NCBI GenBank assembly: GCA_047495785.1
Contig: JBLDXI010000029.1
Span: 3,844,001 to 3,908,000, forward strand
Length of the DNA: 64,000 nt
Direction of reading: 5' to 3'
DNA from: Lepidodermella squamata
Taxonomy: Eukaryota; Animalia; Gastrotricha
Below, piece after piece: positions 802 to 43,337 of this stretch. The position numbers and the translations under genes are program-made. The notes below the pieces were generated by a model, which made no database searches, was not told the origin of the DNA, and worked only from the letters and a program-made list of their open reading frames with translations. Positions within the stretch are counted from its first letter, which is position 1. Each line of letters opens with the position of its first letter.

Positions 802-3800
802 ATGCTATCGAGCATTATTCTGGTGAGATGTTTTGAAAAAGCAATTCATATTTGTTTTGTATATCGGCTCTGAAAAAACAGATGTTTTCTCTTGCATCGA
901 GCGCAATTGGGCAACCCATGGGGAAAAGTAAGTCTCACGAGGTAGTGGAGAGTTTCTTTTTAGAAATGTCTTTTTGATTATTAATGGATTAATTGATAGA
1001 TTGCACGGATGCCTCGGTGCAATGCCCACAGCATCAAAGATGCGAATCCTTCTCGACTTTTGTAAGAAACACTGTGGAACCACTACATCGTTGAGTTTCA
1101 GCACGCGCGCTAATTGGTCAACGGTATTTGCATTTCGGCCAGTATGCGACTTTCAGGGGGGATGTGGGATCATCTCCCCCAGCTCAGCCGGGCCAGACAG
1201 CAAAATCAGAATTTATCCCACTGTTTTGTTAATTTTGGAAGGTTCTGGGGCGTGTTTTAGTGGAAAATTTCCAAAACTTTCTCGCTTCGCTCGGTTATTA
1301 GCCGAAATGACTCGTCGGCGTGCACGACCAAATAATTTTTTCCATCCCAGGGAGCTCGGGGATCGAAGATCGCACCCTGATTTTGGTCGCGCATTCGACC
1401 AATATGTTTAATGAGAAAATGACATTTCCAAACCACTTGCATAGTTTCAAATGACTACGGCAGTATGTTCGCAAACTCAGTTAAGTACCGGCAATTTTGG
1501 CGGCAGAAAATGTCCCTAACACTCTCGTCGTCTTAATCCAGCCGCACTGCCGGCTTATTTGTACATGTCATCGGCCAAATCAACTGATGTTCTTTGTAAA
1601 CATTGTCTCCTAATCAAGATTTCGACGAGAAAATTCAAAATTAATACCTATTTCCAATTTTCTACGGTGAATGATGCAGAACATTTCGCCGCATTGCGTT
1701 TGAAAGGAGCTAGGAGCTACTCAATCTTTATTATTCATAAGACATTCATCATGAACATATAACATAGTGGCTTCTTTCAAACGCAATGCGACGATTTTAT
1801 GAGACTACCCAAAAGGCACAATTGCAGTCTTGGAACCAGAATCAACTAATTCTAGACAATTGAAAACTGGTGACAATTGAGGGGAGTCATAGAAACGACC
1901 CATTGACCAATCAGCGTGGACTTTCTAGTGGTTTCTTAATGAAGGCTATGCAAAATGCCTGCTTTTCTAATTTACTGCTTATCTAGGATCCACCATGCAA
2001 GTCGAAAGCTTGCGTTTGTGAAGACTGCGCTAAGCGAGCAGATGAAATGGATATCTGTTTTCCGGGTACGTTTTTCCCATGGCATCGGAAAAAAATAACC
2101 TTTTCTTTTATCTTAGTCACTTACGTCAACTTCTTGAGCGACTCATGCGCCCCTAGAGATGTAGTAACCATACCCGGCGCGTCCTGTTTTTCCAAATCGA
2201 ACAAAATCAAGTGCCACCTTGGCAACCAGGGAAATGGCTGCGCCGCTCGGACACGATGCGGCAATGGAGCTTATGGTTATTGCGGTGGTTACAGCCGCGA
2301 ATGCGTGCAAGATTGGTGCGTTTGCGTGGTGGAGAACGAGGTTTTCGACTACAACACCGGCGGCTGTGTCGCTCGTCAAATCGGCGATTTATGCTCGAAG
2401 GATTCTGAATGCGCTATTACGCGCCAATATGGCAAGAAGAACTACTTGGTCTGCCGCAGTGGCAAATGCGCTTGCGATACGGAGCTTTCTGTTGAAACTG
2501 AGTACCGTGATTACAATTCTGAGTGGAATACCTACGATGTCAAGCGGGCTTGTCTGCACAAGAATGCCACGATTAACCTAAAACAGGGCGAGAAGTGCGA
2601 CCTTCCTGAGAACAGCCGGCCCCGGATGTGGATGGACTTCAGATGGCAATTTAACTGGGATGACGGCACGGTTCACGTTTGCGAAAAATCACTGATTTGC
2701 TTCGCTTGTATGGAAGATGGCAGTGTGGGGTTGTGCCGTGAGTTTTGAGGTGGCTTTTCAATGTGAATTCGACCCTGGGTGGTTTATTTACCTTTTTAAT
2801 ATGTTTCTGCTTTTTTGACCATAATTTTTAACCGGATTTCTACTTTTATAACCGCCCGAGTAACAGTGCTTTTACCGGCGAGGGGGAGGGGGCTCCGGCT
2901 GCATTTGAAAACCACCAGTTTGAAGGACGACGTGGCGTCAATGCGGCAAATTTAATAGATTTTCAATAATCATATTATTATAGACGCTGCTTGGTGGGTA
3001 AAACGAAGTTAGGCAGCTATCAAAGTCTGTCTTGGATGCTGCGTTACTGCTAAGATACATGCTGGGATGTCCACTTATTAACAGGCGTTGGTTATTTGGT
3101 TGTTAAATCATAAACAAATACCCGGGGAAAAAATTGAAAACCACCCTGTGAAAGCTGCAGTAAATACCGTGAACAGCTCTGATTTCTCCGCACTAGGCAA
3201 GTTTAATGGACCCATCGGAAAGACGGCTGATCAATGCGGGCGTAAACAATTCGTCTATTCCGGTCCGAAGCCCTCAGAAAGTGCTCCATTCAAGAGCCTT
3301 TCGAGGCAACGCCTGATCACAAGTGAGAACACAGTGATGCACTGTATAGTTTCGTTAATAAATTTATTTATTAATAGATTGCACCGATGCCTCGGTGAAA
3401 TGCCCACAAAATCAAAGATGCGAAGCCTTCTCCACTTTTGTAAGGAATTTCTTTGATTCGCCAATTACCTGCTTCTCTGTTTACAACCCTAAATAATCTA
3501 GGACCCACCATGCACGTCGAAAGCTTGCGTTTGTAACGACTGCGCCCTGCGACCATTGGAATATGGCGATGAATGTGTTCCAAGTATGTTTTTTTCTATA
3601 TAAAACCGTACAATGTTTCTTTTCTTCACCATGCAGCTACCTACATCAACTCCTTAAACTCTACCTGCACATCAACCCCTTGCGAGGTTGTAACCATACC
3701 CGGCTCGGCCTGTCATTCACCATCGAACAAAACCCAGTGCCTTAATGGCACACAGGGCAATGGTTGTAATACTGTGGCAAGATGCTCATCTAACGAAGAT

Positions 3801-4549
3801 TGTTTTGGCAGCGACCGCATTTGCGAGCAAGGTTGGTGCGTTTGCAAGTTGAAGTACCAAGTTTTCGACTACAACACCGGCAGGTGCGTCGAACCTCAAA
3901 TCGGCGATTCGTGTTCAAATAACACCGACTGTACTATTTCGTCCGATATTAAGAACTTTTTGGTCTGCCGCAGTGGCGAATGCGTCTGTGATACGAAGTA
4001 TTCTGTTGAAACCGAGTACCGTGAATACAATCAGGAGTGGAATAGCTTCGACGTCAAGCGTGCCTGTATTAGTGAGGAGTCCACTTTTAACCTGAAACAG
4101 GGCGAGAAGTGCGACGTTCTCGTAAACAGCCGGAAGTGGAACTTGAAGTGGAGACCGGAGTGGACTTTTAATAGGTACTTGCGGCCCTGGGAAGACAGCA
4201 AGATTCGGGTTTGCGAAAAATCACTGATTTGCTTCGCTTGCATAGAAGATGGCGACGGGGGACTGTGCCGTGAGTTTTGAGGTGGCTTTTTAATTCGAAT
4301 ATGACCTTACCATTAATAATAGGCAAGTTCAATGGAACCATTGGAAAGTCGGCTGAACAATGCGGGCGTAAAGAATTCGTCTATTCTGGCCCGAAGATGT
4401 TAGAAAGCGCTCCGACTAGATCCGTTGCCAGGCAACGCCAACTGACAAGTAAGCACAACGATACAATTGCCGGAAAGAACGACGTGACTTCGGCTGTGCC
4501 CTCAGCCACTATCCTGGCTGCTGTCCTGCTCGTCGTTTCAGCTTCATAG
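802..4549 (+). CDS. Gene A: two-module Cys-rich (EB-module-like) GPI-anchored surface protein, 10 exons
   Basis: Exons 802-822, 882-927, 1000-1061, 1987-2065, 2117-2737, 3197-3322, 3378-3439, 3502-3583, 3637-4269, 4323-4549 join in frame through GT-AG introns. Signal peptide MLSSIILMFSLASSAIG, two ~30-Cys modules with C-x5-C-xn-C-x4-C-x-C EB-like repeats, and a hydrophobic C-terminus SAVPSATILAAVLLVVSAS*. Confidence 0.85.
1140..1379. mobile_element. hAT-like MITE (TIR CAGGGTGCGA-type) in intron 3 of gene A
   Basis: Absent at the paralogous site in gene B. Ends are CAGTATGCGA / TCGCACCCTG with a degenerate 8-bp TSD ATTTCGGC/ATTTTGGT. Related copies at ~35242-35459 (inverted) and ~32180-32665. 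Confidence 0.7.
1687..1793. mobile_element. 107-bp foldback MITE with a 4-bp ATTT target duplication (Sola-like)
   Basis: TIRs CGCCGCATTGCGTTTGAAAGGAGC / GCTTCTTTCAAACGCAATGCGACG. The empty site ACATTTTATGAG is present in gene B. Confidence 0.7.
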
Positions 4550-8591: not shown

Positions 8592-11500
8592 ATGCTATCG
8601 AGCATTATTCTGGTGACATGTTTCTTTGAAAAAGCAATTCATATATTTGTTTTATATTTCCTCTCTGGAAAACAGATGTTGTGTCTTGCATCGAGCGCTA
8701 ACGGGCAACCCTTGTGGAAAAGTAAGTCTCACGACTTCGTGGAGAGTTTCTTTTTGGAAATGTCTTTTGGATTATTAATGGATTAATTGTTAGATTGCAC
8801 GGATGCCTCGGTGCAATGCCCAAAGTATCAAAGATGCGAATCCTTCTCGACTTTTGTAAGAAACATTATGAAACCACTACATCGTTGAGTTTCAGCACGC
8901 GCGCTAATTGGTCAGCGGTCTTTGCATTTCGGCCGCGCATTCGACCAACATGTTTAATAACAAAATGACATTGCCAAACCACTTGCATATAGTTTCCAAT
9001 GACTACGGCTGCAGATTCGCAAACTTAGTTAACTATAACGGCAATTTTGGCGGCAGGAAATGTCCCTAACACTCTCGTCGTCTAAATCCAGCCGCCCTGC
9101 CGGCATATTTGTACATGTCATTGGCCAAATCAACTGATTTTCTTTGTAAAAATTGTCTCCTAATCAAGATTTCGACGAGAGAATTCAAAATTAATACCTA
9201 TTTCCAATTTACCACGGTGGATGATGCAGTACATTTTATGAGACTACCCAAAAGGCACAATTGCACTGCCTTGGCACCAGCCTCAAAAAATTCCAGAAAG
9301 CGGGAAAGACAAAGTGGAAAACTCGTGACAATCTCATTCAAGGAGTAGAAAATCGCCAAAATTTGCAAGATAGTCCATCGATCGGATTTTCGAAAGCCGC
9401 ATTTCAACCATCATTTTACCAAAAAAATTGAGCGGAGTCATAGAAACGACCCATTGACCAATAAGCGTGGACTTTCAAGTGGTTTCATAGTGAAGGCTAT
9501 GTCTATTTGACTTTTCAAATCTAGGATCCACCGTGCAAGTCGAAAGCTTGCGTTTGTGAAGACTGCGCTAAGCGAAACGACGCACTGGATATCTGTTTTC
9601 CGGGTACGTTTTTCCCATGGCATCGGAAAAATAACCATTTCTTTTATCTCAGTCACTTACGTCAACTCCGTAAACGACTCTTGCGTCCCTGGCGTAGTCG
9701 TAACTGTACCAGGCGCGTCGTGTTATTCCGAATCGAACAAAATCCAGTGCCACCTTGGCAATCAGGGAAATGGCTGTGCCGCTCAGACACGATGCGGCAA
9801 TGGAACTGATGGTTTTTGCGGTGGTTACGACCGCGAATGCGTGCAAGATTGGTGCGTTTGCGTGGAGGAGAACGAGGTTTTCGACTACAACTACGGCAGC
9901 TGTCGTGCACGTGAAATCGGCGATTTATGCTCGAAGGATTCTGAATGCGCTATTAAGCGCGAATATGGCAAGAAAAACTACTTGGTCTGCCGCAGTGGAA
10001 GATGCGCGTGCGATACGGAGGTTGCTGTTGAAGCCGAGTACCGTGAATACAATTCGGTGTGGAATACCTACGATGTCAAGCGGGCTTGCTTGCACAAGAA
10101 TGCCACGATTAACCTAAAACAGGGCGAGGAGTGCGACTTTTTTGATAACAGCCGGCACTGGATGTGGATGGACACTGGATGGCAATGGAAATGGGAAGAC
10201 GGGACGGTTAGCATTTGCGAAAAATCGCTGATTTGCTTCGCTTGTATGGAAGATGGCAACGTGGGCTTGTGCCGTGAGTTTTGCGGTGGCTTTTCAATGC
10301 GACTTTGACCCTGGGTGTTTTATTTACTTTCTTTTATTTTTCTGATGTTTTAACCATAAGTTTTAACCGGGTGTCTACTTTTATGACCGCCTGTGTAACA
10401 GTGCCTTAATCGGGGTGGGAAGGGGGCTATGGCTACATTTGAGAGCCAATAATGCTTTCAAGGACGACTATGGCGCGGTGCTGTGCGTCAGTGCAGCAAA
10501 TTTATTAGATTTTTCATAGATAAGGGTTAACCTTTATCTAGGAGATTTTTAAATATGAAAATATTAGAGACGCTGCTTAGTGGGTAAAACAACGTTTGGC
10601 GGCTTCTGGCAAGCAAAGTCTGCCTTGGATGGTGCGTTACTGCTAAGGTACATGCTGGGATTTCCACTTATTAACAGGCGTTGGCTATGGTTGTTAAATC
10701 ATAAATGAATACTGGGGAAAAAACAAATGAGAGCCACCCTGTAAAACTGCAGTAAACACTGTGCAGAAAACACTCTGATTTATCCGCACTAGGCAAGTTC
10801 AATGGACCCATCGGAAAGTCGGCTGAACAATGCGGGCGAAAGAAATTCGTCTATTCTGGCCCGAATCCCTTAGAAAGTGCTCCATTCAAGAGCCTTTCCA
10901 GGCAACGCCTGATCAAAAGTGAGCGCACAACAATGCACTGTATAGTATCGTTAACAAAATGTTCCATTATTTAATAGATTGCACAGATGCCTCGGTGAAA
11001 TGCCCACAAAATCAAAGATGCGAAGCCTTCACCATTTTTGTATGCGGGCATTCGCTTTGCAAATTACCTGCTTTTCTATTTACAAACCTGAATGTAGGAC
11101 CCACCATGCACGTCGAAAGCTTGTGTTTGTAACGACTGCGCTCTGCGACCATTGGAATACGGTGATGAATGTCGCCCAAGTGCGTTTTTTTCTTTATAAA
11201 ACCGTAGAATGCTTATTTTTTCACCGTGCAGCTACCTACATTAACTCCTTAAACTCTACCTGCACATCCACCCCTGGCGAGGTTGTAACCATACCCGGCG
11301 CGGCCTGTCATTTACCGTCGAACAAAACCCGGTGCCTTAATGGCACACAGGGCAATGGTTGTAATACTGTGGCAAGATGCTCATCTAACAAAGATTGTTT
11401 TGGCAACGACCGCATTTGCGAGCAGGGTTGGTGCGTTTGCAAGTTGAAGTACCAGGCTTTCGACTACAACACCGGCAGGTGCGTCGAACCTCAAATCGGC

Positions 11501-12446
11501 GATCCGTGTTCAAATGACACCGACTGCTCTATTTCAGACTATCTTTGGAATTACATGGTCTGCCGCAGTGGAGAATGCGTCTGTGAGAAGTATTCTGTTG
11601 AAACCGAGTTCCTTGAATACAATCTCGAGTGGAATAGCTTCGAGGTCAAACGGGCTTGTATTAGTCCGAAGTCCACTCTTAACCTGAAACAGGGCGAGAA
11701 GTGCGACGTATTGTTAAACGGCCAGAAGTGGAACCTCAATTGGAGACCGGAATGGATTTTCAGCAATCACTGGTGGCGCTGGGAAAAAAGCAAGATTCGG
11801 CTATGCGAGAAATCACTGATTTGCTTCGCTTGCATAGAAGATGGCGACACGGGATTGTGCCGTGAGTTTTGAGCATAGAGAACGTAGTGGTCAGAGTGTG
11901 CACTCACGCTCTTTCTCTCGAATCAAAAACCTTTTTGTGTGCGCGCATTCTTTTTTAAATTATTGTACATGGTAATTTTGTGTATTTTAACATTTTTGCG
12001 CGGAAATCGGCCTTCACGTATTTCCTTGAAATAACACCTTTCAAATAATTCGATCCTGCTTTTTCACGTGGCAATGGTTGCAGGGATATTCGAAAAGTTC
12101 GGAGGAGTTTTCATTTATTTTTTGTTTCAGTGTCGCATCGTGAGCGCGAACTCAGATCACTTCGCTCTCTATGGTTCTGAGGTAGCTCTTTAATGTGAAT
12201 TCGACCGTACCATTAATAGGCAAGTTCAATGGAACCATTGGAAAGTCGGCTGACCAATGCGGGCGTGAAGACTTCGTCTATTCTGGCCCGAAGATGTTAG
12301 AAAGCGGTCCGACTAGATCCGTTGCCAGGCAACGCCAACTGACAAGTAAGCACAACGATACCATTGCCGGAAAGAACGGCGTGACTTCGGCTGTGCCCTC
12401 AGCCACAATCCTGACGGCTGTCCTGCTCGTCGTTTCAGCTTTATAG
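8592..12446 (+). CDS. Gene B: two-module Cys-rich GPI-anchored surface protein, paralog of A
   Basis: Same 10-exon layout and phases as A (ATG 8592, hybrid linker exon 10793-10918, stop 12446). No in-frame stops were seen in the exons. Confidence 0.85.
11874..12173. mobile_element. 300-bp MITE with an 8-bp TSD (P- or hAT-like) in the last intron of gene B
   Basis: ~35-bp imperfect TIRs starting CATAGAG and TSD GTTTTGAG/GTTCTGAG. The empty site is present in gene A. Confidence 0.8.
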
Positions 12447-15400
12447 TTACTGAATTGATCGATCCGGCTGATTTATCTGAAGCATACTGATGATTAAGAA
12501 CCTTTCGAAACGCTAAAATAAATTTCGTAGTCCTAATCTGTAAATCGTAGCCAAACTGTAAATTGTCACTTGTGCATGCAACAAATCGTGTAAAGTGTAA
12601 ACACAAATGTGAAGCCGTAGCTAGATGCCAGATGTAGTAATTGGCAAGCCGAAAAATTAAATTGCCCCTCTATCGAATTCTATTATGAGCGAGAATTTGA
12701 CCATTTTTGACGATTATGTCCTCAAATTAAGTCTCAGATCAACCACTCTTCCCCGTCTTCCGCCGCGTAAACCCCGACTATCACGACCACAACCACGAGT
12801 ACCACCACGAGCCCCACGACCGCCGATAGCCAAGCTCCGCGGACTAGGAACAACTTATTCTGCAGAACTGTCGATTGTAAATATTGCTCATTGCTCATAA
12901 AAATTAGGACTCTAATTTTTTATGTAGCGATCACGTCATTTTGACACCATGAGGTATACTTCATACTGGAATAGGCAGGGTACGTGCAACTTTTAAAGTC
13001 ACGTTGAATGACACCAGGAGGGAATTTTACGATAAAAACAAGTTGGAAAACTGTTCGTCACATGTCACATGCTGCAGATGGTGCCACAATGTCAACATTT
13101 CATGGAGCACCCGATGTCGACACCAAGGTCAATAGCATTTCGCTTTCGTTCTGACTAACTAAAAGTGCATACTATTGTAAGAAATGACTCTTGAAACCTT
13201 GTTAGTCTTACGGCCTTTAATTGTCGCCATTACGGCGGTAAAAAAGTTCGCTCTCCAAGAGGTCTTGGATATGCTATAAACGGTTCGACGTCTTGCCGCC
13301 AGGATGTTGACTCGGGCGAAGGAGCAGTGTAGAAGATGGACATTTTGCCGAAAGGGGGATGTAGGTAAGGGTCCCCCCTTATATCGCTCAAGTTTCCGCA
13401 TGGTTCAGGGAAAAAATCATGAGGGTCCCCCCTGTGGTTAGGCTTCGAGCCCGAGTCCCGAGGGCTCGAAGCAGGGACAGTCCTCCCCGCCATCTTCGAA
13501 ACTGCGAAGGAGACGGTGGTGGAATTATTGACAATTTACCGCCCCGATTTCTTCTCGCTCCAGCTGAGGCCGTAACAACGAATCCAAATAGCAATCCGTA
13601 CAGTAACGAGATGCCATCGATCCAGCAAACAGGCGAGTCTTTTTTCAAACAATTGCCTTACAACTTGCCGTCTCAAATATTAGGCCCGGTTGCCATTAAT
13701 TCCGGTATTCGCCAACGACGCTTTCGTCCCTTACAGATGAAGAAAGAGCCGCCGTTGCTACGCAAGCCGAAAGGACGCCGTTTACCGAGCGCCAAACTGA
13801 AAGTACCCCTACCCCTATATGTATCGGTATATTAGTTAGTTCATCAACAGTGTTCATCAACAGTGTACCTCGAAACACTCCATTTTTCCTATATACGTTT
13901 TGAATCGTTCGAAATTTTCCACTGCACCATGAAAATTCTCAGCAATTTCCTGATGTAACCCAGGCCTATTCGTTGGTGTTCTGATGAAAGGGCTCGTCTC
14001 CTGAAATATGCCGTAAATCATTTACATCACACTTCGTAAATAGCTATTATTATTCGTAATGCCCATTTGATGTTGGGGGTTGGGGGAATTCATAACTGCT
14101 ATGTTGTTACATGTTGTAGTATGTTGTAGAGTTCGTTCATTAAAAAATTACTTTCTCTTTTACTTTGGCCTGGTATTTTATTAGTAATCCTCTTAAAATG
14201 TTCCAGTTGCTAATGTTCCAGTTTCGTAAAATACAGTTTGGAACTCCACATAAAGCCACGAAATCAGAAGAAAAATGATCGCTAAATCGTAAATTATCGA
14301 TGAGATTTCTCAGCAATAAGCTACCCGCTCAAAAATCGCCGATCAAACGCGAAAAATGCTACTCAGATATTCAAAATGATTCAGTTTTAAACAAATTCTA
14401 TCAATTTTCAAAGTCTGAATAAAAATGCAGCCTGGCGGGATTATGCAATGTTATGATTATGAGCTCGTTCTGTCTCGGCCAGTATTATTGATTGGCGTGA
14501 AAATTAATTTATGAATTGCGGCGGCCGTACGTCTGCTGAGAAGGCGAGTTTCTGCCTCATCGCATATTGCATTATCGCGGCGCGGCCAGTGCTTCCATGA
14601 ACATATCAATTTCTGACAGGAAAGCCTGCATTGGCAAGGGAGTGCGCTACCTAAGGCCTTTTTCCATGGAACACCCGGAAAAAAACATTCGTTGCTCATC
14701 TTGCATAAAAACTGGAACGCACACCTGTTGAACAAGAAAACGTACTGATTGCTCGCATCTTTTGCGAAATATTAGACAATATGCTTCTGTTTCAAATAAT
14801 GCTTCTGCTGCCCGGGAAAAAAGTTACGCCGCTCGCAAACATATGAATTACTACGCGGCTGCTAGACAAAATTAGGGCAAAAGTAGCGGCAAGATCTTCA
14901 TCCACTTCTTCTATCGTTTTCCATACTTCGTCACGATCACTAAGACCATCTCCTAGTCCATAAAAGTAATCAAGAATAATTGATCAACGAACAGATTTTT
15001 ATTGTGTCCTTTCTCCAAAACAATTAATTATGTGTGAAGAAACTGGAGGGGAAGAAAGGTTCTGCGACCGAGGGTATTACTTCCACCCAGCCGGAGCAGT
15101 AGGTGTTAAGAGCTCTGCTCAGTTATACAGTATACATACGCGCCGTGACTTGGAGGCGCCCACTGACCTTCAGAGAACGGACAGCGCACGCTTAGCCACT
15201 AGGCCACGTGCTCCCCTTGTAATACTTGTAATAACTATTAGTAGCCCGAGTTGGCTTTGAAGAAATCGACATCTGACTGACGTCTGACAATTCTAGCTGA
15301 AAAGCATTCTGCAGTACTGTAATCTATCAACTCTATATACTCTTCGATTGAGCTTACAAGCAGCATGATATCGAGCATTATTCTGGTGAGATGTTTTGAA

Positions 15401-16822
15401 AAAGTAATTCATATATTTGTTTTATATTTCCTCTCTGAAAAACAGATGTTGTCCCTTGCATCGAGCGCAATTGGGCAACCCATGGGGATAAGTAAGCCTC
15501 ACGAGGGATGTAGTTTATTTTTGGATATGTCTTTTGGATTTTTTGATGGATTAATATTTACTTATATTAATATTAATTGTTAGATTGCACGGATGCCTCG
15601 GTGCAATGCCCACAGTATCAAAGATGCGAATCATTTTCAACTTTTGTAAGAAACATTGTGGAACTATAAAATTGTTGAGCTTCAGCAAGCGCGCTGATTG
15701 GTCAACGGTCGTTACATTTTGGCCATGCAATCGACTAATGAATTAATTGAAAAATGGCATCGCCAAATTAATTGCATGGTATCCAATGACTAGACCCCGC
15801 ATGATAATCTTGGCTAAACTGCAGCAAAACAAAAACTTGTAGCAACATTTAATGGATCGCACGACCGACATGTTTCATGCCAGTCATTGAAACGACCGAT
15901 TGACTAATCAGCGTGTGCCAGAGAAATGGAATTGGTTCCATAATGAAGGCTATGCAAAATGCCTGCTTTTCTACTTGAGACTTATCAAATCTAGGACCCA
16001 CCGTGCAAGTCGAAAGCTTGCGTTTGTGAGGACTGTACTAAGCGAAAAGGTTTCCCTCACTCATTTGACAGGTGTCGTCCGGGTACGTTTTTCCCACGCC
16101 CCACAGCATCGGAAAAATAACCATTTCTTTTATCTCAGTCACTTACATCAATTCCTTAGACGACTCCTGCATCCCCGATAGTCCTGATGCTGTTCTAACC
16201 GTTACAGTACCCAACGCGGACTGTAATGAACAGAACAAACCCGAGTGCATCTTCGACAGGCAAGGAAATGGCTGCGACGCTGGGACACGATGCGGCAATG
16301 GAACTGATGGTTTTTGCGATGGTTACAACCGCGAGTGCATGCAAGATTGGTGCGTTTGCGTGGAGGAGAACGAGGTTTTCGACTACAACTACGGCGGTTG
16401 CGGTGCACGTCTCATCGGCGATCAGTGTAGAAAGTAGGGGGGGGGGGGGGGACGGTGGGTATCATCCTGGTCTCGGCGATGCTTCATCCCGACCTGGCAA
16501 GGGACGACAGCTCATCCCCGGGGGGATGAGGTTATATCCTGGTCTCCAGCCTAAACTGCACTGGGGACGATACTGGTAGCGGGGTGAAGTTAGCGCAATC
16601 TGACGCCAAAATTTGAAATTTACGCGCAAAAGCCCTTTCAACTGTAAATCGCGAGATTGTAAAAATATAATTAAGAATATCTAAATTATATATGACATCC
16701 AGCACAATAATGGAATTATAAAAGAAGCGAGGTATAGACTTTTTACGCAAGGTGAGGTGAGGCAGACCTTAAAGCGGCAGACCTGAGCCGTTCTCGTCCA
16801 CTTTCATAGATATGCAAGAGTG

Positions 16823-17295: not shown

Positions 17296-17304
17296 ATTTT
17301 TTCG

Positions 17305-26924: not shown

Positions 26925-28130
26925 ATGCAATCGAGCATTATTCTGGTGAGATTTTTCTGAATGATTCAAATACTTTTTAAATGTTCTACCTGAAATTTAG
27001 ATACTGTCCCTTGTATCGGGAGCACTGGGACAAAAGCTGTTCTCAAGTAAGTCTTTCCCCGATGCGTAACAGAGTTTCGTTAATGTAATTTGTTAATTGA
27101 TACTAGATTGCACGGATAATTCTGCGAAATGTCCACAAAATCAACGATGCGAACCCTTCACGACTTTTGTAAGCACGCTTATTATCTATCTACTCTATTT
27201 ACACATTCTCAATCCAAACTGTAGGACCCACCATGCAAGACGAAGGCTTGCGTTTGTAACGATTGCGCTCGAGGGTACATGGCCGATGATTGTGTCCAGG
27301 GTATATTTTTCTTATTTCTCTAGAAAATCCCGCAGATTTTATCATTTCTTTCATCTCAGCAACCTACGTCAATTCCTTGAACGCAGCCTGCAATATGCCT
27401 GGCGGTATTTTAACCATACCCGGTTCGTTCTGTGATATTAAGGGGAACCAAGCTCTGTGCCTCACTAGCCCTAAGGCGAATGGTTGCGAAACTACTACAC
27501 AGTGCTCATCTAACGAAGATTGTGGAGCCACCCGAAAATGCGACAATAAAGTGTGCGTTTGCTTTGAGGCTTATCAGGCTTACGACTACAACACCGGCCT
27601 GTGCGCCGCACGGCAAATCGGTGATTCATGCTCGAATGACGCTGACTGCGCTATTACGCGTGGTAGTCCGAACTATTTGGTCTGCCGTAGTGGAAAATGC
27701 GCCTGTGATACGGCCGTTAGTAATGAAACCGAGTACCGTGAATACAACGACGACTGGAACAGCTTCGACACCAAGCGAGCTTGCTTCGGCAAGAATGCCG
27801 CGCTTAACCTGAAACAGGGTGAAAGATGCGACCAAAAACCGAGCAATGATAACTACCTAGCGCCTAAGGTTTGCGAGAAGTCACTGGTATGCTTTGCTTG
27901 CATGGAGGATAGCGGACTGTGCCGTGAGTTTTTGAAACGGAAATGTTTAATATCTGAGAATTGAATTCTTTCGATTCTTTCCAGGCAAGTTCAACGGACC
28001 CACACAGCCCACTGGTAAGTCGGCTGATCAATGCGGGCGCAAAAAGTTCGTCTATTCGGGCCAGCCTCGTTTGTCCTCCGGCTCAGCATCCGTCATAGCT
28101 GCCGTTTTGCTCATTGCTTCTGCTTTTTGA
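26925..28130 (+). CDS. Gene E: single-module Cys-rich GPI-anchored protein
   Basis: Six exons with the family phases. Starts MQSSIIL|ILSLVSGALGQ and ends SGSASVIAAVLLIASAF*. Confidence 0.85.
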
Positions 28131-29959: not shown

Positions 29960-30128
29960 GTCCAATGGACCTTCGGCTGATCAATGCGGACGCCAGAAGT
30001 TTGCCTATTCGGGTCCGAAGCCGTTGGAAAGTACCCCGATATAGACCATTGACAGTAAGAACGGCGCGCCTTCAGGCATCTCCTCAGACTCAGTCCTAGC
30101 AGCGGTCTTGCTCATTGTTTCACCTTAA
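29960..30128 (+). pseudogene. Orphan terminal (GPI) exon of the Cys-rich family with a premature stop
   Basis: Translates NGPSADQCGRQKFAYSGPKPLESTPI*TIDSKNG...VLAAVLLIVSP*. A LINE relic lies where the upstream exons would be. Confidence 0.8.
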
Positions 30129-30740: not shown

Positions 30741-31976
30741 ATGTTAGCGAGCGTAATTCTGGTAGGATTTTGAAAAATATCAATTTCTCTGAAATTTCCC
30801 CCGGAAAATTAGCCGTTGTTTATTGCATCGAGCGCGCTGGGGCAACGCCTGTCCACAAGTAAATCAAATGTTACACTGCTAAGCTTAGTTTTAATCTGTT
30901 TTCGATCTCTAGATTGCACGGATGCCTCAGTGAAATGCCCACAAAATCAAAGATGCGAATCATTCTCGACTTTTGTCTGTTCAGCCATACAGACAATCTA
31001 TTATTCTATTTAAAATCCCAACTCTAGGACCCACCATGCAAGACTAAGGCTTGCGTTTGTAACGATTGCGCTGTTCGAGGAGAATATGGCGATGATTGTG
31101 TTCCGAGTATTATTTTTCTACATAAAATCGCAAACTTCATTTCATTTCTTTCTTCTCAGCTTCCTATGTCAACTCGATAAACGCAACCTGCACATCTACC
31201 CCTGGCGTTGTTGTAACCATACCCAGCGCGGCCTGTGATACGGAATCGAACAAAACCCGGTGCCTCATGGGCACATTTGGCAATGGCTGCCATCCTGGGG
31301 CATTATGCTCAAATAGTAGTTCGTGTCTTGGCTACAACCATCAATGCGAGAAGAGTTGGTGTAGATGCAAGGAGACGAATGAGTACTTCGACTACAACAT
31401 CGGCAGATGCGGCGAACGACAACTCGACGAAATATGCATGAGTGACAGTGACTGCGCTGTTACGTCCACTCCGAAGAACTACATGGTCTGCCGCAATAAC
31501 AAATGCACCTGTGATACGGCCGTTTCTGTTGAAACCGAGTACCGTGTGTACAGTGCGGAATGGAATAGCTACGATGTCAAGCGTTCCTGTGTGAGCAAGA
31601 AGGCCACCGTTAACCTGAAACAGGGTGAACGATGCGACCCAGTCTTGAACGCTGCCAACTATGAAACGGCTAAGGTTTGCGAGAAATCACTGGTCTGCTT
31701 TGCGTGCATGGAGGACAGCGGACTGTGCCGTGAGTTATTAAGGTGTATTTTTTCAATCTGATTTTTACCAATATTTTTCTAGGCAAGTTCAACGGACCCA
31801 TTGGAAAGTCGGCTGATCAATGCGGTCGTCAAAAATTCGAGTTTTCAACGCCAAAGGCGTTTGGCGATGCCCCAATCAAGACTGCTGCCTCGGCTAAGAG
31901 CGGTGCGACTGTCGTTGTATCCTCGGTCTCGGCGCCTATCACAGCTGCTATCTTGCTTATTGTTTCGGCTTATTAA
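30741..31976 (+). CDS. Gene F: single-module Cys-rich GPI-anchored protein
   Basis: Six exons. Starts MLASVIL|PLFIASSALGQRLST, the exon 3 donor is a weak GTCTGT, and it ends APITAAILLIVSAY*. Confidence 0.8.
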
Positions 31977-33505: not shown

Positions 33506-34752
33506 ATGTGCATTCGATTATACCTGGTCAGTGAACCACATATCATATTTGTAAATTCTGATTATTAATGTCAACTTTTTTCTAAAGGTCCTGTATTTTA
33601 TTACTTTTAATTCATCTCTAATTGCTGCTCAGCATTTTTATAGTTCGAGTCTGTTCATTTATGTCGTGACTGAACTTACGAACTAAACTGCCTTTTTCAT
33701 ATCAGATTGCACGGAAGTTGGCTCAAATTGCCCCGAGAATGAATATTGCGAGTCTTTTCAAGCCATGGTAAATATTTCTATTGAGATCTTGCCTATTGGT
33801 CTACTTATTATGGATTAGGACCCACCCTGCTCATCGAAAGCCTGTATGTGCAATGCCTGTGCGAAAAGAGGATACTTATTCGATCAATGCTTAACGAGTA
33901 AGAACTATTGCATCGAATATTCTTTGATTAATCGCTTAACCGTAACCTATAGTGTCATATCGGAACCAATTGGGAGATTCCTGTACCGGCAGTGAGAATG
34001 AGGTTATCACAATCCCACGAGCCGAGTGCGACACGGGGAAGAAGCAAGTCTCATGTACAGTTGGCAAACAAGGCAACGGTTGTAGTTCTGGGTTTAATTG
34101 CGACAAAGGCGGGATGTGTTTAGGCTACAATTCCAAATGCGTCGCAAATCAATGCGTTTGCCAATTCGATCACGAATATTTCGATCCAAATGAAGGCAGC
34201 TGTGTGCCGCGAAAAATCGGCGACTACTGCAATGAATTATCCGACTGCCAGAATGCAGCCTCCTTAACGCCGAATTATCTTGTGTGCTCAGCTATCAACG
34301 GAACTAAAACTTGCAATTGCGACATGGCAAAATCTGTCGAAACTCAAGTGACCACTTTCTCTGAAGATTGGAATGAGCTGGTTACGGGGAACGTTTGCCT
34401 GCCTAATGGGTCGAGAATTAACCTGGGCAAGGGCGAATCTTGCACTATGAACTATGAGCGTTTCATTGGTTCGAACACAATCAAAGTCTGCGCGAAAAAT
34501 TTGGTTTGTTTTCAATGCCCCGAAGAGGCGGATTCTGCTGAAGGCAAATGTCGTGAGTTAACGCATTACGCAATGTAAATATATTTTGAAATTTCTTTAC
34601 TGACAGGCATTTTCCCTCAAAATCTGATCAAATCAGACGAAGCTTGTGGGGCGAAGAGGTTCCTATATTCGAAAGCTGATCGAAATCGTTTCAAGTGCAT
34701 CAGGACAACATCTTTGCTGTTTTTCATTTTAGTATTAGCTTTCCTTTCATAG
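33506..34752 (+). CDS. Gene G: divergent single-module member of the Cys-rich family
   Basis: Same exon pattern (NCTEVGSNC.., DPPCSSKAC.., large exon ending GKC|R, last exon SDEACGAKRFLYS...LLFFILVLAFLS*). The exon 1 and 2 donors are weak, so the start is less certain. Confidence 0.75.
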
Positions 34753-36175: not shown

Positions 36176-37421
36176 ATGTTAACGAGCCTAATTGTGGTGA
36201 GATATTTTCAAAATTCGCTTAAATTATATATCTTAAGTTCCATTTAAAATCAGACGGTGTGTCTAGCATCGAGCGCATTCGGGCAACGCCTGCTCACAAG
36301 TATAAACCCCAGGTGCAGAGTTTCGTTTTCAGCCTTTTAAATTAATAGATTGCACGGATGCCTCGGTGAAATGCCCTCAAAATGAACGCTGCGAATCCTT
36401 CTCGACTTTCGTAAGAAATTTCGCTAGCCATACAACTATTTAGTTTTATTAAAAAATATTCAGGACCCACCCTGCAAGTCAAAAGCTTGTGTTTGTAACG
36501 ACTGCGCCATTCGAGCTCTTTTCAAGGACAACTGTGTTCCGAGTAGGCTTTCCCTGCCAAATCAGAGAAACAGGCATTTTCTTTGTTATCCCAGCCACCT
36601 ACGTCAACACTCTAAACGCGACATGCGTCGCCGATAGCCCTGGCGTTGTCGTAACCGTACCCCGCGCGTCCTGTTTTTCAGAATCGAACAAAACACAGTG
36701 CATCCTTGATAATCAGGGAAATGGTTGCGAAGCTGGGACACAATGTGGCAAGGGAACCCTGGGCTTTTGCGCTGGTTACAACCGCAAATGCGTACAGGAT
36801 TGGTGCGTTTGCGTGGAGGAGAACGAAGTTTTCGACTACAACGCCGGCGGTTGTGTCGCTCGTCAAATCGGCGATTCGTGCTCGAAAGACTCGGAATGCG
36901 CTATTACGACCGATAAGAAGAACTATTTGGTCTGCCGCAGTGGCAAATGCGCCTGCGATACGGCGGCTGGTGTTGAAACCGAGTACCGTGAATACAATGA
37001 AGATTGGAACAGCTTCGATGTGAAACGTGTTTGTATGAGCAAGAAGGCGACTGTAAATCTGAAACAGGGTGAGAAGTGTGACCCTACCGTGAACAACTGG
37101 AACTTCGAGGCTGCGAGGGTTTGCGAAAAATCTCTGATTTGCTTCGCTTGCATGGAAGATGGCGAGAAAGGACTGTGCCGTGAGTTTTCAAGGCGGATTT
37201 TTTAATCTGAATTTTACCACGAGACTTTTCCAGGCAAGTTCAATGGACCTATTGGTAAGTCGGCTGATCAATGCGGTCGTCAGAAGTTTGTCTATTCGGG
37301 TCCGAAGCCGTTGGAAAGTGCCCCAGTCAAGACCATTGCTGGCAAGAGCGGTGCGACTTCGGCTGTCTCTTCAGCATTAATCCTAGCTGCTGCCTCGCTC
37401 ATTGCTTCAGTTTCCTATTAG
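36176..37421 (+). CDS. Gene H: single-module Cys-rich GPI-anchored protein
   Basis: Six exons. Starts MLTSLIV|TVCLASSAFGQRLLT (donor GTATAA) and ends SAVSSALILAAASLIASVSY*. Confidence 0.82.
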
Positions 37422-38700: not shown

Positions 38701-41393
38701 ATGCGGTTGTTCTTGATAATAACAGTTTTTACTTTCGAGCCTATCCTCGGGAGTAAAATACCACTCAATGCCTCTATACCGGGCTCTGCTATTTCTTATG
38801 ATTACAGCAACGCTCCACTTCTCAATCGGAAAAAGCTTCATGTCATGATGTCTATTTCCTACGCGGGCGGTTTCCCGATGGGGCCGCCTTGTAGCGAGGC
38901 AAAAGGCATCGCATTGGACCAACTTCGCGCCGACCCCAACTGGCTGCCTAACTACGAACTGGTTCTTGACCTCGTTGAGGACAAATGTTCTGATGCGACG
39001 TCACTGGGCAGTCTGGCGAGGAATCTAAGGTTCAACTCCGAGTCGGATAGCCTATTGCCGATTTTCGTTGCTCCTGAGTGCGATGAACAAGTCGGGCAAG
39101 TTCTTTCAGCTTCTCTAGTCAAACAATTCAACTTTTTCTCGGTAAGACGATTCCTATTTTCATTTCTTGAAGTTTCACACGATTTTCACACAGATGACTC
39201 TAGCTCAGGGTACAAATCGGTTGTATCTCCAACGCGACCGCTATCCAAATTATCTGAATTTTGGACAGCGAGGTGACATTCAGTACATAGCCTTGGCTAT
39301 GTTCATACTGAAAATGGGTTGGAAGAAGGTCGCCATTATTTCAGACATTCACCCCTACGCCAATATGGTAAGTAAATTTGAGCAATCTCCGATAGTTCTA
39401 GAGCACTGATTTCACAGATGGACCCAGCGCTAGTCCTTGCCTTAGAATCCGCAAAGATCGAGATCCAGCACATGGGTAAATTTCACCTATCATTCGGCGA
39501 TCCTGATTTGCTCACGAGCGACTTTCTTGAGATGAAACGCCGAGAGCCCAGGATAATCATATCGCAAAGCGGGAAAACCAGTGCGGTAGCTTGCTGGCTT
39601 TATCGAATGGGAATGTATGGTCCGCAGTACGTCGTATTCTCGCTGGCCTGGTTTCCATGGATCTCCCGTGACACGCCAGTACATTCTTTAGTCAAGGATT
39701 GGTGCAAAAAAGAGATGATGCTAGAAGTCGCGCCTAGTTTCTATTATTACGGCGATATGAGCCTAGGAGACGTTTTCGGGCCTAATACAACAGATTCCAC
39801 AGGTTTATCGGAAAAGGGGATGAGAGATAAGCTGAAGGAAAGAATCGAAAAGCCGGAGACTCACGAAAATTGGGACTACTGGCCAGTTATCTGCTATGAT
39901 AGAGCTTTAGCCGTAGGTCAGTTACTTCAATCAACAGAACAAGTTTTGAACGAGAGGAATCAAACTTTGATAGATTGGGTGACTTCTGCCTCAAATTTCG
40001 CTAGGAACGGTAGTTTCATAGTCTCAGCAATCAAGGAAGGAGCTTACAGACTCAACTTCACAGGTTTGAAGGGGGAGTATGGAATTGATAAGTCGACCAA
40101 CCTTACAAAAGGATACGTCCCAATCACGTTTTCTAGAACTCAATCCAATAACTCCGGTTTCGCTACCGCTGCTTATCTTAAGCAAAACGACCCTAAAGAT
40201 CCCCTCAAAATCTTGGATTTGAAATGGAACACAAAGGATGGTTCAGTTCCTCGGGATATTGTTAAGGTAGTTCTAGTGAACCAACCTATGCTAACTACTA
40301 AGAATGGCCAGATTCTCATTGTAATCGCAGCGATTGAATGTGCAGCTTTTGCTGTTTTCATATTTTTCGCTGCCCTCCGAAAGAAAAAACGCTTTTCGGC
40401 GATGAAGCGACTCACGTTCAGAAGGGATGACTACGTAATTCTTATCGGGGATATCATTCTTTTAAGCTCAATTTTCGCACTTCCCCTAAATGTGACTAGC
40501 GAATCTATCGCTCACAACTGCAGAGCTGCTTCAGTTCTGATAGTCATCGGAATTTCTTTGATTTTAACCGGCATCTCGGCGAAGTTAAGCTACAATCAAG
40601 AGATGAAGCTCATCGTGTCCACTGGATCCCATGTTAGCCATACCAGACCTCAAACAGTTATGTCATACAATCCGAGTATGATGCTTCAATACGAGTCGAA
40701 ACTCAACCGATTGGCCTCTGACTTCTTCAAGAATAGCTACCTCTTCGCAGGGGTTTGGACTGCCATCAATTGCGGGCTGATTTCAGCTCTACTCATCCTT
40801 CATCCAATGCGAGCAACTCCAATCTTCTCGGACTCATTCTCGGATTTGGCAGATCCAAGTGTTGTTTATAAGCCATTCAGCTATCAATGCGATATCTCTA
40901 GCAGTTTCTTCTCAGAATCCGACAGTTTAGCAATTTTCGCTGTTATGTGCGTCCTTCAATTCGGTCTCTTCCTTCGAGTTGTTTTTCAGTCAATGACAGT
41001 CCGAATGTCTAAGGTAAGTTCCCCCTAAACTGTCCTTTTTCCTTTGACAAGGCAACTTTTGTTAAAGAAATTGAAGCGAAGCTTTACGGGAAACGACGTT
41101 CGCAACACGGCGCTGTTTGTCAACTGCAAGATCACACTAATCATCGCCGTTCTTATCCTCGGTCCAGTTCTAGCTAAACTTCGCGCAGAATACGCGTTAG
41201 TGCTCACTGCCTCGTTTGCGATTTCGTTCGCGCTCGCGAATGCTGTACCAGTTGTCTTAATGAAGGTATGTTGTACTTGTTCGATTATTTTAATCCAAAT
41301 TTGGTCATTTTTGTCTAATAGCTCTTCATCAAACAACGTATTGCGCCGATCAACAACAGCTCAGCTAGATTGATACGAGTCATGCCTGCTTGA
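38701..41393 (+). CDS. Class C GPCR, GABA-B-receptor-like (Venus flytrap + 7TM), divergent
   Basis: Signal peptide, then WLPNYELVLDLVEDKC, RDRYPNY, MGWKKVAII, MGMYGPQYV and WNTKDGSVPRD, then hydrophobic helices ending VVLMK|LF. Five exons with GT-AG introns and no Cys-rich linker domain. Confidence 0.85.
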
Positions 41394-42086
41394 AAGAAGA
41401 ATTTTCTGAACTCCTCCGTGACATAATTTGCGGTGAAATGCTTGTTAGACAAATTGTACTCTGAGCTAATTTTGCAGGCACAAGGCTAATAGTGCGAAAC
41501 ACATAGCCGTTAGTATTAATGCTGACTAGTAAAAATTAAGCATTTCTGCGCTATGACGACACTGATATTAAAGGAATTTCGTGGAAGGTTTTAACGAGAA
41601 AAGTAAATAAATTCATCAGAAGTTATATGATCAGATTGGAAGTTCGAAGTAGCGGAACGCCTTAGTCGAGGATCAATATCTCTCTATGATGTCAAAGCGT
41701 TCGTCGGATACATCCTCAAAGAAATTCCTCCTGAAATCGAGGAATCGACCAGTGGTGGAGTTAGGAAAATGTCTGGAAAACAGAAATTTGTTACATTTTC
41801 GCTGGAGCCGAATAGTCTATTCTCAAAACCTTCCTAATCGCTAGCAGTTCTTCTTTCGAAATCATTAAATCTTCGAATCTGAGCAACCTTTTAATATCAC
41901 TTCAATAATTTGGAGTATTTGCCTACTATAAGTGCGTACTTGGTGTTAATGCTACATAAAAGGATTCTTTACAACAGCGTAATGTTATGCTGTGTAGTTT
42001 TTTTTCACAAAAATATACTACTACAACTATACGCTCACGTAGTTGTAAAGAATAAATATATATTATGATAGTTGCATGAATTATCC

Positions 42087-43337
42087 ATGAAAGGGGTTCT
42101 GGTAAGAATTATTGATGTAATTTCTTATTTCCAGTAATCGTAATTTTTTCATCGATAAAGATTGTTCTTACCATTATTGCAGCCCTGGGCGAAGCTCATA
42201 TAAGGCTAAGAGATAGTAAGGCCCATTACGTTTTACCCTACAAGCTTTCCTAGCTGTGTTTGCTTGCTAGACTGCACTGACACTCCCTGCCCGAAACACG
42301 AGAGATGCAATGTCTTCAGATTCGTAAGTCCACTATGGAAAGGTATCAATTGATTGAAAATTTGCCTTCAGTTAACAGGATCCACCCTGCGAATCCAAGT
42401 TTTGCTCATGCGATGATTGCTCAATGCCCGAAATTGACGGCTCATGTTACCCAGGTTGGAAAATCTGAATTAACTTCCTCCTAATTTCAACATTTTTCGA
42501 AAATCAGTAAAATATATCAATGAGCTGAATGAGCCGTGTGAACCGAATAAGAAAGGTCAGGAAATCACGATGCCCTCGGCCTACTGTAACTCGGAGCTAA
42601 ACAAAACTGATTGTATCATGGCGAAATTTGGCAACGGATGCGGAACGTTAGGTGCAAAAACTACCTGTATCGAAGACCACGAATGCCTAGGCAAATGCAA
42701 ATATGGCCGATGCGTATGCGAGCTGCCTAACAGGTACATCGATCTAAACTTGGACCGATGCGTGCCTCGTAAAGTAAGATAATTTTTCTGATTTTTCCTG
42801 ATGATTTCAGGGGATTTTTCATGGATTTAGAGAGGTGATGTCTGTAGGAACAGCGCTGAATGTGCGAGCAGGCGTGATCCGAAAAAATACCCATTTGAGG
42901 AAACAAATTACATGATTTGCGTCAACGGCAAATGCGATTGTGACGCTGTAAGAGGGCAACTGGCGTTCCACACCATTTTCGACGAGGACCTCAACGAATT
43001 TGTTGATATTGAGAGATGCGTGGCTCTTACGGCGACTGTCAACCTAACTAAGGGCGAGCCGTGCTCTTTTGAAGATTTCGACGATAAGAATGCGCAGATA
43101 TGCGAGCAAGGCCTTATATGTCAGGGCTGTCTCGGGAATGACTACGAGACCACTTACCTTTGCCGTAATGCTACTTTCAATGGAAAAACGGCGAAACAGT
43201 GTGGTCGGAAGACTTATGTATTTTCTTCGGCACCATCTACTGCAAAGACATTTTCGCTAATTTTTGAATTCCTAGTGCTATATTCTATCTTCAAAATCAG
43301 AAAGATTGAACACAATCCGATGATGCAGCTTAAATAA
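42087..43337 (+). CDS. Gene I: highly divergent outlying member of the Cys-rich family
   Basis: MKGVL|IVLTIIAALGEAH..|NCTDTPCPKHERC..|DPPCESKFCSC..|..FGNGC..CVPRK|RGDVC..ICEQGLICQGC..KTAKQCGRKTYVFS. The Cys scaffold is conserved, with one extra intron and the final intron absent. Confidence 0.75.

What the first reader, a model, noticed from the sequence alone, without database searches (positions are those of the whole stretch)
802..43337. Tandem array of GPI-anchored 30-Cys proteins with CDR-like hypervariable loops: candidate undescribed variable recognition system
Seen: nine genes and 12 modules share a conserved Cys scaffold and exon phasing, while divergence is concentrated in three loops. 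(1) The end of exon 4: KRADEMDI, KRNDALDI, KRKGFPHSFDR, LRPLEYGDE, VRGEYGDD, IRALFKDN. (2) The segment before NYLVC: ITRQYGKK, ISSDIK, ISDYLW, IEYNLS, ITRGSP. (3) The loop before CEKSL, 12-33 aa long. Relics and a disrupted copy show birth-and-death turnover. Known: this pattern is typical of immune, allorecognition and other ligand-binding families (e.g. lamprey VLRs, sea-urchin Sp185/333, Hydractinia Alr), but those use other scaffolds. Inference: an EB-like disulfide scaffold is used as a diversified surface binder.
Basis: partly seen in the sequence, partly recalled or inferred. Interest (0 to 1): 0.92.

Follow-up and report, generated by a model that had tools for sequence, protein, structure and literature searches.

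The report
Tandem array of EB-like surface proteins
This is a real cluster of nine neighbouring animal genes for cysteine-rich, probably GPI-anchored surface proteins built around an EB-type module; some of their loops vary faster than the rest, but nothing tested here shows an immune-like variable recognition system.

Summary
The array is real. There are 12 modules in 9 genes on the + strand (802-43337), with 29 conserved Cys columns plus one in the following exon. The exon plan and phases are conserved, and C-terminal tails look like GPI signals. One copy is split by a 2,030-bp transposon, and one terminal exon is a relic.

The module contains a below-threshold EB module. Its only relatives among 1.84 billion representative proteins are 37 unnamed metagenome proteins, which are also arrayed on their contigs. 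No solved structure matches.

The "three CDR-like loops" claim holds only in part.
- Among the recent duplicates (genes 1-3), amino-acid differences are 2.3-5.3 times denser in those loops.
- Across the family, at least six other inter-cysteine segments have pooled dN/dS near 1.
- About half of all sites fit omega = 1.
- Loop 1 is identical in three modules.

Site models favour a class of 6-16% of sites with omega about 2-2.5. P is 0.0002-0.009 on all columns and 0.03 and 0.005 on ungapped columns with segment trees. No site reaches posterior 0.95. Gene conversion and indel bursts confound the test.

Best reading: an undescribed lineage-specific family of surface proteins, diversified between germline paralogues. 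An immune or allorecognition role is untested.

The parts
802..4549 (+). Gene 1, two modules: M01 (1002-2745) and M02 (3380-4277). Linker exon at about 3197-3322. Terminal exon with hydrophobic tail ends at 4549.
8592..12446 (+). Gene 2, two modules: M03 (8796-10281) and M04 (10980-11869). Terminal exon 12225-12446.
15365..20539 (+). Gene 3, two modules: M05 (15586-16422 plus 18461-18817, split by a transposon) and M06 (19376-20267). Terminal exon 20318-20539.
16423..18452 (.). DNA transposon inserted in the large exon of M05. It has 16-nt terminal inverted repeats (16423-16438 / 18437-18452) and an 8-bp target duplication TCGGCGAT (16415-16422 and 18453-18460). It also holds three 172-bp tandem repeats and a 259-aa ORF. 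It is hAT-type by duplication length; Pfam does not recognise the ORF.
22606..23846 (+). Gene 4, one module (M07, 22786-23611). Terminal exon 23661-23846.
26925..28130 (+). Gene 5, one module (M08, 27109-27931). Terminal exon 27990-28130.
29961..30128 (+). Relic terminal exon (SNGPSADQCGRQKF...hydrophobic tail) with an in-frame stop and no module upstream of it.
   Evidence: no module hit nearby
30741..31976 (+). Gene 6, one module (M09, 30915-31737). Terminal exon 31788-31976.
33708..34752 (+). Gene 7, one divergent module (M10, 33708-34560). Terminal exon ends at 34752. The start codon was not located.
36176..37421 (+). Gene 8, one module (M11, 36351-37187), mosaic between clades. Terminal exon 37239-37421.
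38701..41028 (+). Unrelated gene inside the array: an ANF-receptor-type ectodomain plus a multi-pass membrane region, in two long ORFs. It is homologous to a gene that follows an EB-family gene on metagenome contig L004.
42087..43337 (+). Gene 9, the most divergent module (M12, 42273-43163). It has an extra intron at 42774-42830 and no intron before the FNGK...QCGRK stretch. Its C-terminus is less GPI-like.

Best explanation
The region holds a lineage-specific family of secreted proteins, most probably GPI-anchored, on the cell surface.

THE PROTEIN. Each module of about 260 aa is a disulfide-locked stack of short beta-hairpin subdomains with 30 Cys and an EB module at its centre. It sits on a short stalk (KFNGxIGKSAxQCGRKxFVYSG...). 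That stalk is followed either by a GPI-type signal or, in genes 1-3, by a second module.

HOW THE ARRAY GROWS AND CHANGES. Four processes are visible: whole-gene tandem duplication, internal module duplication, gene conversion between copies, and short indel or frame-shift bursts in loops. Genes are lost by transposon insertion and decay.

SELECTION. Cysteines and the two terminal subdomains are kept. About half of the sites are nearly free to change. A few loop positions may be driven to change.

INFERRED FUNCTION. The proteins bind extracellular partners, with specificity differing between germline paralogues. This is an ordinary diversified surface-protein family, not a hypervariable receptor system.

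SHOWN VERSUS INFERRED. Shown: gene anatomy, family membership, relatives, evolutionary pattern and predicted all-beta fold. Inferred: GPI anchoring, surface location and a binding role.
For: - Anatomy and conserved exon plan.
- Signal-peptide mini-exons and GPI-like tails.
- EB core.
- The predicted fold is all beta-hairpins, with pLDDT 85.4 and pTM 0.69.
- Relatives: 37 hits in 1.84e9 representative proteins. All 30 whose clusters were looked up are unnamed and come from metagenome or read-archive assemblies.
- The relatives are also arrayed. Five genes lie in 6.8 kb on L006, three to four on L002 and two on L001.
- Mosaicism: nucleotide identity shifts along the module. Segment trees conflict, with a 98% split against a 99% split.
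- Selection profile. M0 omega is 0.38. M1a puts 48-55% of sites at omega=1. M2a/M8 put 6-16% at omega 2-2.5.
- Loops are enriched for differences in young duplicates.
Against: - No expression, protein or localisation data were available.
- GPI anchoring was judged by eye only, and gene 9 has an atypical tail.
- A binding function is inferred only from architecture.
- The omega>1 class, if real, would also fit a more specialised recognition role.
- My site models hold relative branch lengths fixed and use home-written code. That code was checked only against the IQ-TREE M0 likelihood.
Confidence: 0.6

Rival explanations
1. One reading: a germline-diversified recognition system for immunity, allorecognition or symbiont sensing. 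The EB-like scaffold would display three hypervariable loops that form a binding site under diversifying selection.
For: - Site models reject the null. M7/M8 gives p 2e-4 to 7e-3 and M8a/M8 about 0.001-0.005.
- 9 of 13 columns with posterior >=0.8 fall in the three loops, which make up 22% of columns (hypergeometric p 3e-4).
- In young duplicates, differences are 2.3-5.3 times denser in the loops.
- The array shows tandem birth-and-death with conversion.
Against: - No site has posterior >=0.95.
- M1a/M2a falls to p=0.034 on ungapped columns with segment trees.
- Recombination and misaligned indel bursts are known causes of false positives, and both are present.
- Six other segments are as variable as the named loops.
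- Loop 1 is identical in three modules and in another pair.
- Only 12 modules are seen.
- In the wider family the equivalents of loops 2 and 3 carry conserved motifs: G[FY]T[FYW] and DP[IV]Y.
- No immune-type domain is present, and there are no expression or polymorphism data.
Confidence: 0.12
2. A structural surface coat or apical-matrix component, comparable to other EGF/EB-type repeat proteins. Only the disulfide frame would matter, and the loops would simply drift.
For: - About half of the sites fit omega=1.
- Variability is spread over many inter-cysteine segments.
- EB, EGF, WR1 and lustrin-type modules form a continuum typical of matrix and cuticle proteins (PMC13174244).
- First-reader notes report many other GPI/mucin arrays in the same genome (unchecked).
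Against: - The omega>1 class remains significant in every variant of the test.
- Trp-rich insertions of 19-25 aa arose in loop 3 of the two-module genes and were kept in frame.
- The modules are single or double, not long repeat strings.
Confidence: 0.2
3. Accessory subunits or tethered ligands of the neighbouring ANF-receptor-type membrane proteins, kept together by linkage.
For: - The gene at 38701-41028 lies between array genes 8 and 9.
- On metagenome contigs L004/L005, an EGF + EB-family gene with a GPI-like tail lies about 460 bp upstream, on the same strand, of an ANF_receptor gene.
- That gene is homologous to the window's gene (E 2e-31 over 510 aa), against E 0.001 for the window's other receptor gene.
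Against: - This is a single case. Three other relative loci (L001, L002, L006) have no such neighbour.
- Receptor genes of this type seem common in this genome, with two in this window.
- The L004 EB protein is only a distant relative (hhalign E 7e-15; BLAST to modules 1e-4 at best).
Confidence: 0.08

Closest known systems
EB module proteins (Pfam PF01683), e.g. nematode and arthropod 'EB domain-containing' or 'prion-like (Q/N-rich) domain-bearing protein 25' entries
   Same: The central part of the large exon (about residues 84-122) aligns to the EB profile. The best Foldseek and Atlas neighbours are EB-domain proteins. Both are extracellular, disulfide-rich beta-hairpin modules.
   Different: The window copies score 19-20 bits against a cut-off of 24.3. 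The EB part is only about 40 of 260 residues. The flanking 8-Cys N-terminal subdomain, the following Cys-rich part of the large exon and the C-terminal hairpin subdomain have no Pfam model. TM-scores are only 0.2-0.33. The function of EB modules is itself unknown.
Dickkopf CRD2 / colipase-fold proteins (Dkk1, MIT1)
   Same: They are the top PDB hits and are small disulfide-rich beta folds.
   Different: E-values are 0.03-0.14 and TM by query is 0.16-0.17. This is not significant, so they are not the same fold.
Plasmodium P25/P28 (GPI-anchored surface proteins made of EGF-like domains)
   Same: The analogy is in design: a compact, cysteine-dense module tethered by GPI. Pfs28 appears among the weak PDB hits (E 0.2).
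   Different: There is no detectable homology, and the cysteine pattern and organism group differ. The GPI/EGF description of P25/P28 comes from my own knowledge, not from a tool result.
   Same: They are tandem multigene families whose variation is focused on parts of the protein.
   Different: The scaffolds differ. Here there is no evidence for somatic assembly, extreme polymorphism or immune expression. Variation is modest, with mean column identity of 64% among 10 modules.

Membership tests
EB module (PF01683) | Score at or above Pfam's gathering threshold (24.3 bits) | tested here: not met
   Window modules score 19.0-20.2 bits, E 6e-4 to 1.5e-3. Two of the four first tested gave no EB hit.
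EB module (PF01683) | Relatives of the same family recognised as EB | tested here: met
   24 of 37 aligned family members match EB at E<=0.01, with best 7.3e-9. Precomputed EB hits are listed on L001, L002 and L004 genes.
EB module (PF01683) | Same fold as EB-domain proteins | tested here: inconclusive
   Foldseek probability is 0.9-1.0 for EB-domain proteins, but TM is 0.17-0.33. No solved EB structure was found.
GPI-anchored surface proteins | N-terminal signal peptide | tested here: inconclusive
   A split hydrophobic N-terminus (e.g. MLSSIIL + MFSLASSAIGQ...) was seen by eye in 8 of 9 genes. No predictor was available.
GPI-anchored surface proteins | C-terminal small-residue site, spacer and hydrophobic tail that ends the protein | tested here: met
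   Genes 1-8 end in, for example...SGKSGATVIASSVSAPILAAFLLIVSAY. Gene 9 is atypical. Judged by inspection only.
GPI-anchored surface proteins | Release by PI-PLC or lipid-anchor chemistry | not testable with these tools
   This needs experiment.
Diversified recognition receptors (immune or allorecognition type) | Robust site-specific positive selection in defined loops | tested here: inconclusive
   LRT p ranges from 2e-4 to 0.034 depending on model and filtering. No site has posterior >=0.95. Recombination and indel bursts are present.
Diversified recognition receptors (immune or allorecognition type) | Variable loops forming one binding surface | not testable with these tools
   A model was obtained (pLDDT 85.4), but no coordinates are returned. 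Loop 1 lies in another exon that was not modelled.
Diversified recognition receptors (immune or allorecognition type) | High allelic polymorphism or copy-number variation, and challenge-responsive expression | not tested
Dickkopf / colipase fold | Significant structural match | tested here: not met
   Best PDB E-values are 0.03-0.14, with TM by query 0.16-0.17.

The most novel reading that the evidence does not exclude
The array is the visible part of an undescribed germline-diversified recognition family on an EB-type scaffold. GPI-tethered modules would diversify their binding loops by gene conversion plus local indel or frame-shift bursts under positive selection. They might work together with the linked ANF-receptor-type membrane proteins.
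Probability: 0.12. Interest if true: 0.8.

Novelty: new variant of a known kind. Interest (0 to 1): 0.4.

Why it matters
EB modules are widespread in invertebrate extracellular proteins and have no assigned function. This work defines a compact 30-Cys, probably GPI-anchored architecture around an EB core. It has no named relative among about 15 billion proteins, it forms arrays in at least two animal lineages, and it carries a measurable but modest signal of loop diversification. That gives a concrete family in which to test what EB-type scaffolds bind. If loop diversification proves adaptive, it would add a new scaffold to the short list used by animals for variable recognition. If not, it is one more fast-evolving surface family in a genome that seems rich in them.

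Tried and rejected
- The search for homologous proteins with one module found nothing. The exhaustive profile search was needed.
- A profile search of PDB sequences found nothing.
- The first structure model, from 10 sequences, was poor: pLDDT 63.6 with the N-terminal 57 residues disordered. It was replaced by a 37-sequence model.
- Fold searches in PDB, AFDB clusters and Atlas gave no match with TM>0.33.
- The weak SH3_10 Pfam hit (E about 0.01, below cut-off) was dismissed as chance.
- The look-up of encoding contigs for a window protein found no record, so the source organism was not identified. A literature search on 2DBD nuclear-receptor expansions did not identify it either.
- Literature searches for EB module plus GPI, and for PF01683, found no description of such a family.
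- A search for relic copies of the large exon found none outside the 12 modules.
- My first combined model-fitting run timed out and was redone in parallel.
- The transposon ORF gave no Pfam hAT hit. 'hAT-type' therefore rests on the 8-bp duplication and the inverted repeats only.


Full report
WHAT IS THERE

The window is eukaryotic DNA of about 38-48% GC with introns of about 50-60 bp. tblastn with one module, regex scans and a six-frame hmmsearch all find the same 12 module copies on the + strand between 1002 and 43163. There is no further copy of the large exon.

Each module is encoded by three exons.
- A 20-aa exon (CTDASVxCP..RCESFSTF).
- A 23-26-aa exon (PPCKSKACVCxDC, then 'loop 1', then Cys).
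- A single large exon of about 190-212 aa.

The exon ends, as printed for 10 of the 12 modules before the script stopped, are as follows.
- The first exon ends in phase 0, directly before GT, in nine modules. M10 read +9 because my segment stopped three codons short.
- The second exon starts one codon before PPC.
- The large exon starts 2 nt before the [TS]Y.N motif.

Introns are 49-66 bp. The exception is the first intron of the leading modules of genes 1-3, at 925, 669 and 349 bp.

The apparently conserved 'CREF' end is Cys followed by the donor GTGAGTT. After splicing the protein reads ...GLC-R-KFNGxIGKSAxQCGRKxFVYSG. Module 12 carries this stretch without an intron. That exon supplies the 30th cysteine, and 29 Cys columns are conserved in the module itself.

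GENES

Upstream ATG mini-exons (MLSSIIL and similar), followed by a short hydrophobic exon, give a split signal peptide for eight genes. The start of gene 7 was not found.
- Genes 1-3 (802-4549, 8592-12446, 15365-20539) carry two modules joined by a linker exon. About 140 nt of that exon match the terminal exon at 80.6% identity.
- Genes 4-9 carry one module.
- Terminal exons end with a run of small residues and a 12-20-aa hydrophobic tail at the very C-terminus. This is the classical look of a GPI signal. It was judged by eye only. Gene 9 is atypical.

Module 5 is interrupted by a 2,030-bp element at 16423-18452. The element has 16-nt inverted ends and an 8-bp target duplication TCGGCGAT, so removing it in thought restores the frame. 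A lone terminal exon with an in-frame stop lies at 29961-30128. An unrelated ANF-receptor-type membrane protein gene (38701-41028) separates genes 8 and 9.

FAMILY

Pfam gives only a below-threshold EB match for the window's copies: 19-20 bits against a cut-off of 24.3. A word-based search of 5.8 billion proteins was blank.

An exhaustive profile search of 1.84 billion representative proteins found 37 proteins at E<=1e-3, the best at 4.9e-27. The 30 whose clusters were looked up are all unnamed and come from ENA, JGI or Logan assemblies.

The relatives share 22-30% identity with the window modules and 17 invariant cysteines. Of the 37 aligned sequences, 24 match EB at E<=0.01, with best 7.3e-9. 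The module therefore has a genuine EB core flanked by unmodelled Cys-rich parts. A recent paper notes that EB, EGF, WR1 and lustrin-type domains grade into each other (PMC13174244).

The relatives sit on animal contigs with CUT, PDZ, cadherin, astacin and LIM neighbours, and they are themselves arrayed.
- Five genes lie in 6.8 kb on L006.
- Three or four lie on L002.
- Two lie on L001.
- Other pairs share contigs.

STRUCTURE

With the 37-sequence alignment, AlphaFold2 models the large exon at pLDDT 85.4 and pTM 0.69, as a chain of short beta-hairpins.
- No PDB chain matches. The best are Dkk1 and MIT1 at E 0.03-0.14.
- AFDB and Atlas neighbours are EB-domain and Dickkopf-like proteins at TM 0.17-0.33.
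- The PDB sequence profile search was blank.
- Model coordinates are not returned, and loop 1 lies in another exon. The question of whether the three loops share one face could not be tested.

IS DIVERGENCE CONFINED TO THREE LOOPS?

I joined the in-frame exon segments in a script, aligned the 12 modules (280 codon columns) and computed pooled Nei-Gojobori dN/dS for every inter-cysteine segment over the ten closer modules.
- The three named loops score 0.92, 1.15 and 0.87.
- Six other segments score 0.78-1.29: columns 57-73, 75-82, 93-100, 102-108, 110-115 and 124-136.
- The first two exons outside loop 1, and the C-terminal CEKSLxCFxC part, score below 0.3.

Among recent duplicates (the three two-module genes), amino-acid differences are 2.3-5.3 times denser in the three loops (Fisher p 0.017 to 9e-6). 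For M07/M09 and M07/M11 they are not.

Which loop varies depends on the clade. Loop 1 varies among M01/03/05 but is identical in M02/04/06 and in M07/09. Loop 2 is almost completely replaced among M02/04/06. There the nucleotides suggest short insertions and deletions that shift the frame locally, rather than point substitutions.

SITE MODELS

I wrote a GY94-F3x4 likelihood with site classes and checked it against IQ-TREE. M0 lnL is -6519.51 in both, with omega 0.38. Relative branch lengths were held at the IQ-TREE values with one free scale.

With a single tree:

| Test | Ten modules | All 12 modules |
|---|---|---|
| M1a vs M2a | p=0.0036 | p=0.0019 |
| M7 vs M8 | p=2e-4 | p=0.007 |
| M8a vs M8 | p=0.0013 | p=0.0019 |

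In these fits, 8-16% of sites have omega 1.9-2.8 and about half have omega=1. No column reaches posterior 0.95. The 13 columns at or above 0.8 under M8 lie in loop 1 (2), the CGNGxxGxCG region (3), loop 2 (2), column 197 (1) and loop 3 (5). That is 9 of 13 within 22% of the columns, hypergeometric p 3e-4.

The modules are mosaics. Nucleotide identity to different clades changes along M07 and M11. Segment trees conflict, with a 98% split against an incompatible 99% split.

With four segment-specific trees the fit improves by more than 110 log units. The tests then give p=0.009 (M1a/M2a), 0.0013 (M7/M8) and 0.0011 (M8a/M8). After also dropping all gapped columns and the intronic 'REF' columns, p=0.034 (M1a/M2a) and 0.0046 (M8a/M8). 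In that run 6-10% of sites have omega 2.0-2.5, and the top columns are 42, 106, 197 and 226.

The signal is therefore present but modest. It is exposed to the known false-positive sources: recombination and misaligned indels.

INTERPRETATION

The best-supported reading is an undescribed, lineage-restricted family of probably GPI-anchored surface proteins on an EB-type disulfide scaffold. It evolves by tandem and internal duplication, gene conversion, indel bursts and loss. The frame is under strong constraint, many inter-cysteine segments are under relaxed constraint, and a few loop sites may be under diversifying selection.

A binding role with paralogue-specific partners is the most likely function (inference). 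An immune or allorecognition system is not excluded, but it has no positive evidence beyond the weak selection signal. A purely structural coat is a serious rival.

One observation hints at a link to ANF-receptor-type membrane proteins. On contigs L004/L005, an EGF + EB-family gene with a GPI-like tail lies directly upstream of a gene homologous (E 2e-31) to the receptor-type gene embedded in this array. It is a single case.

LIMITS

- The source organism was not identified.
- First-reader notes on the same genome list many other arrays of GPI or secreted families. These are unchecked, but they suggest such arrays are common in this genome.

Noticed in passing
window 38701-41028; L004 17257-20765; L005 13993-17502: An ANF-receptor-type membrane protein gene sits between array genes 8 and 9. 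On a metagenome contig its homologue (E 2e-31) lies about 460 bp downstream, on the same strand, of an EGF + EB-family gene with a GPI-like tail. This may be conserved linkage.
   Followed up: partly
window 2737-2752 and the equivalent end of every large exon: The conserved peptide 'CREF' is a reading artefact. Everything after the Cys codon plus one base is the splice donor GTGAGTT. The Arg codon is completed by the next exon.
   Followed up: yes
window 3942-3965, 11537-11560, 19935-19958 (loop 2 of M02/M04/M06): Seven to eight codons are almost completely different among otherwise roughly 88% identical paralogues. The nucleotides look like a local frame shift with compensating indels rather than point substitutions.
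   Followed up: partly
window 16816-17331: Three tandem copies of a 172-bp unit (100, 98 and 87% identity) lie inside the transposon that splits module 5. The element's 259-aa ORF has no Pfam match.
   Followed up: partly
window 46164-47492 and 49286-50611: Two single-ORF paralogues of 442 and 441 aa. The first, the only one scanned, has a PQQ_2/BamB-type beta-propeller hit (E 6e-16). Both have a Thr/Pro-rich stretch and a hydrophobic C-terminal tail. No exact record was found in the contig collection.
   Followed up: partly
window 5375-5574 and 18889-19082: A roughly 200-bp sequence matches itself in reverse (78%) and has a second copy, matching in both orientations, between the modules of gene 3. 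It looks like a foldback or MITE-like element.
   Followed up: no
window 1156-1382 and 1883-1918 versus 32504-32666 and 35239-35433: Pieces of the long first intron of gene 1 recur, in direct and inverted orientation, between genes 6-7 and 7-8. This suggests a dispersed repeat carried in that intron.
   Followed up: no
window 54750-57035 (-), 57749-58618 (-), 58753-59637 (+): There is a second ANF_receptor-type membrane protein in one 761-aa ORF. There are also two divergently oriented genes of about 290 aa. The first has short-chain dehydrogenase Pfam hits; the second was read as the same kind by eye only.
   Followed up: partly
L006 549-6790; L002 2037-7192: Metagenome contigs from one sample carry arrays of four to five mutually divergent members of the same family (different 50%-identity clusters). 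Arraying is therefore a family trait, not peculiar to this genome.
   Followed up: partly
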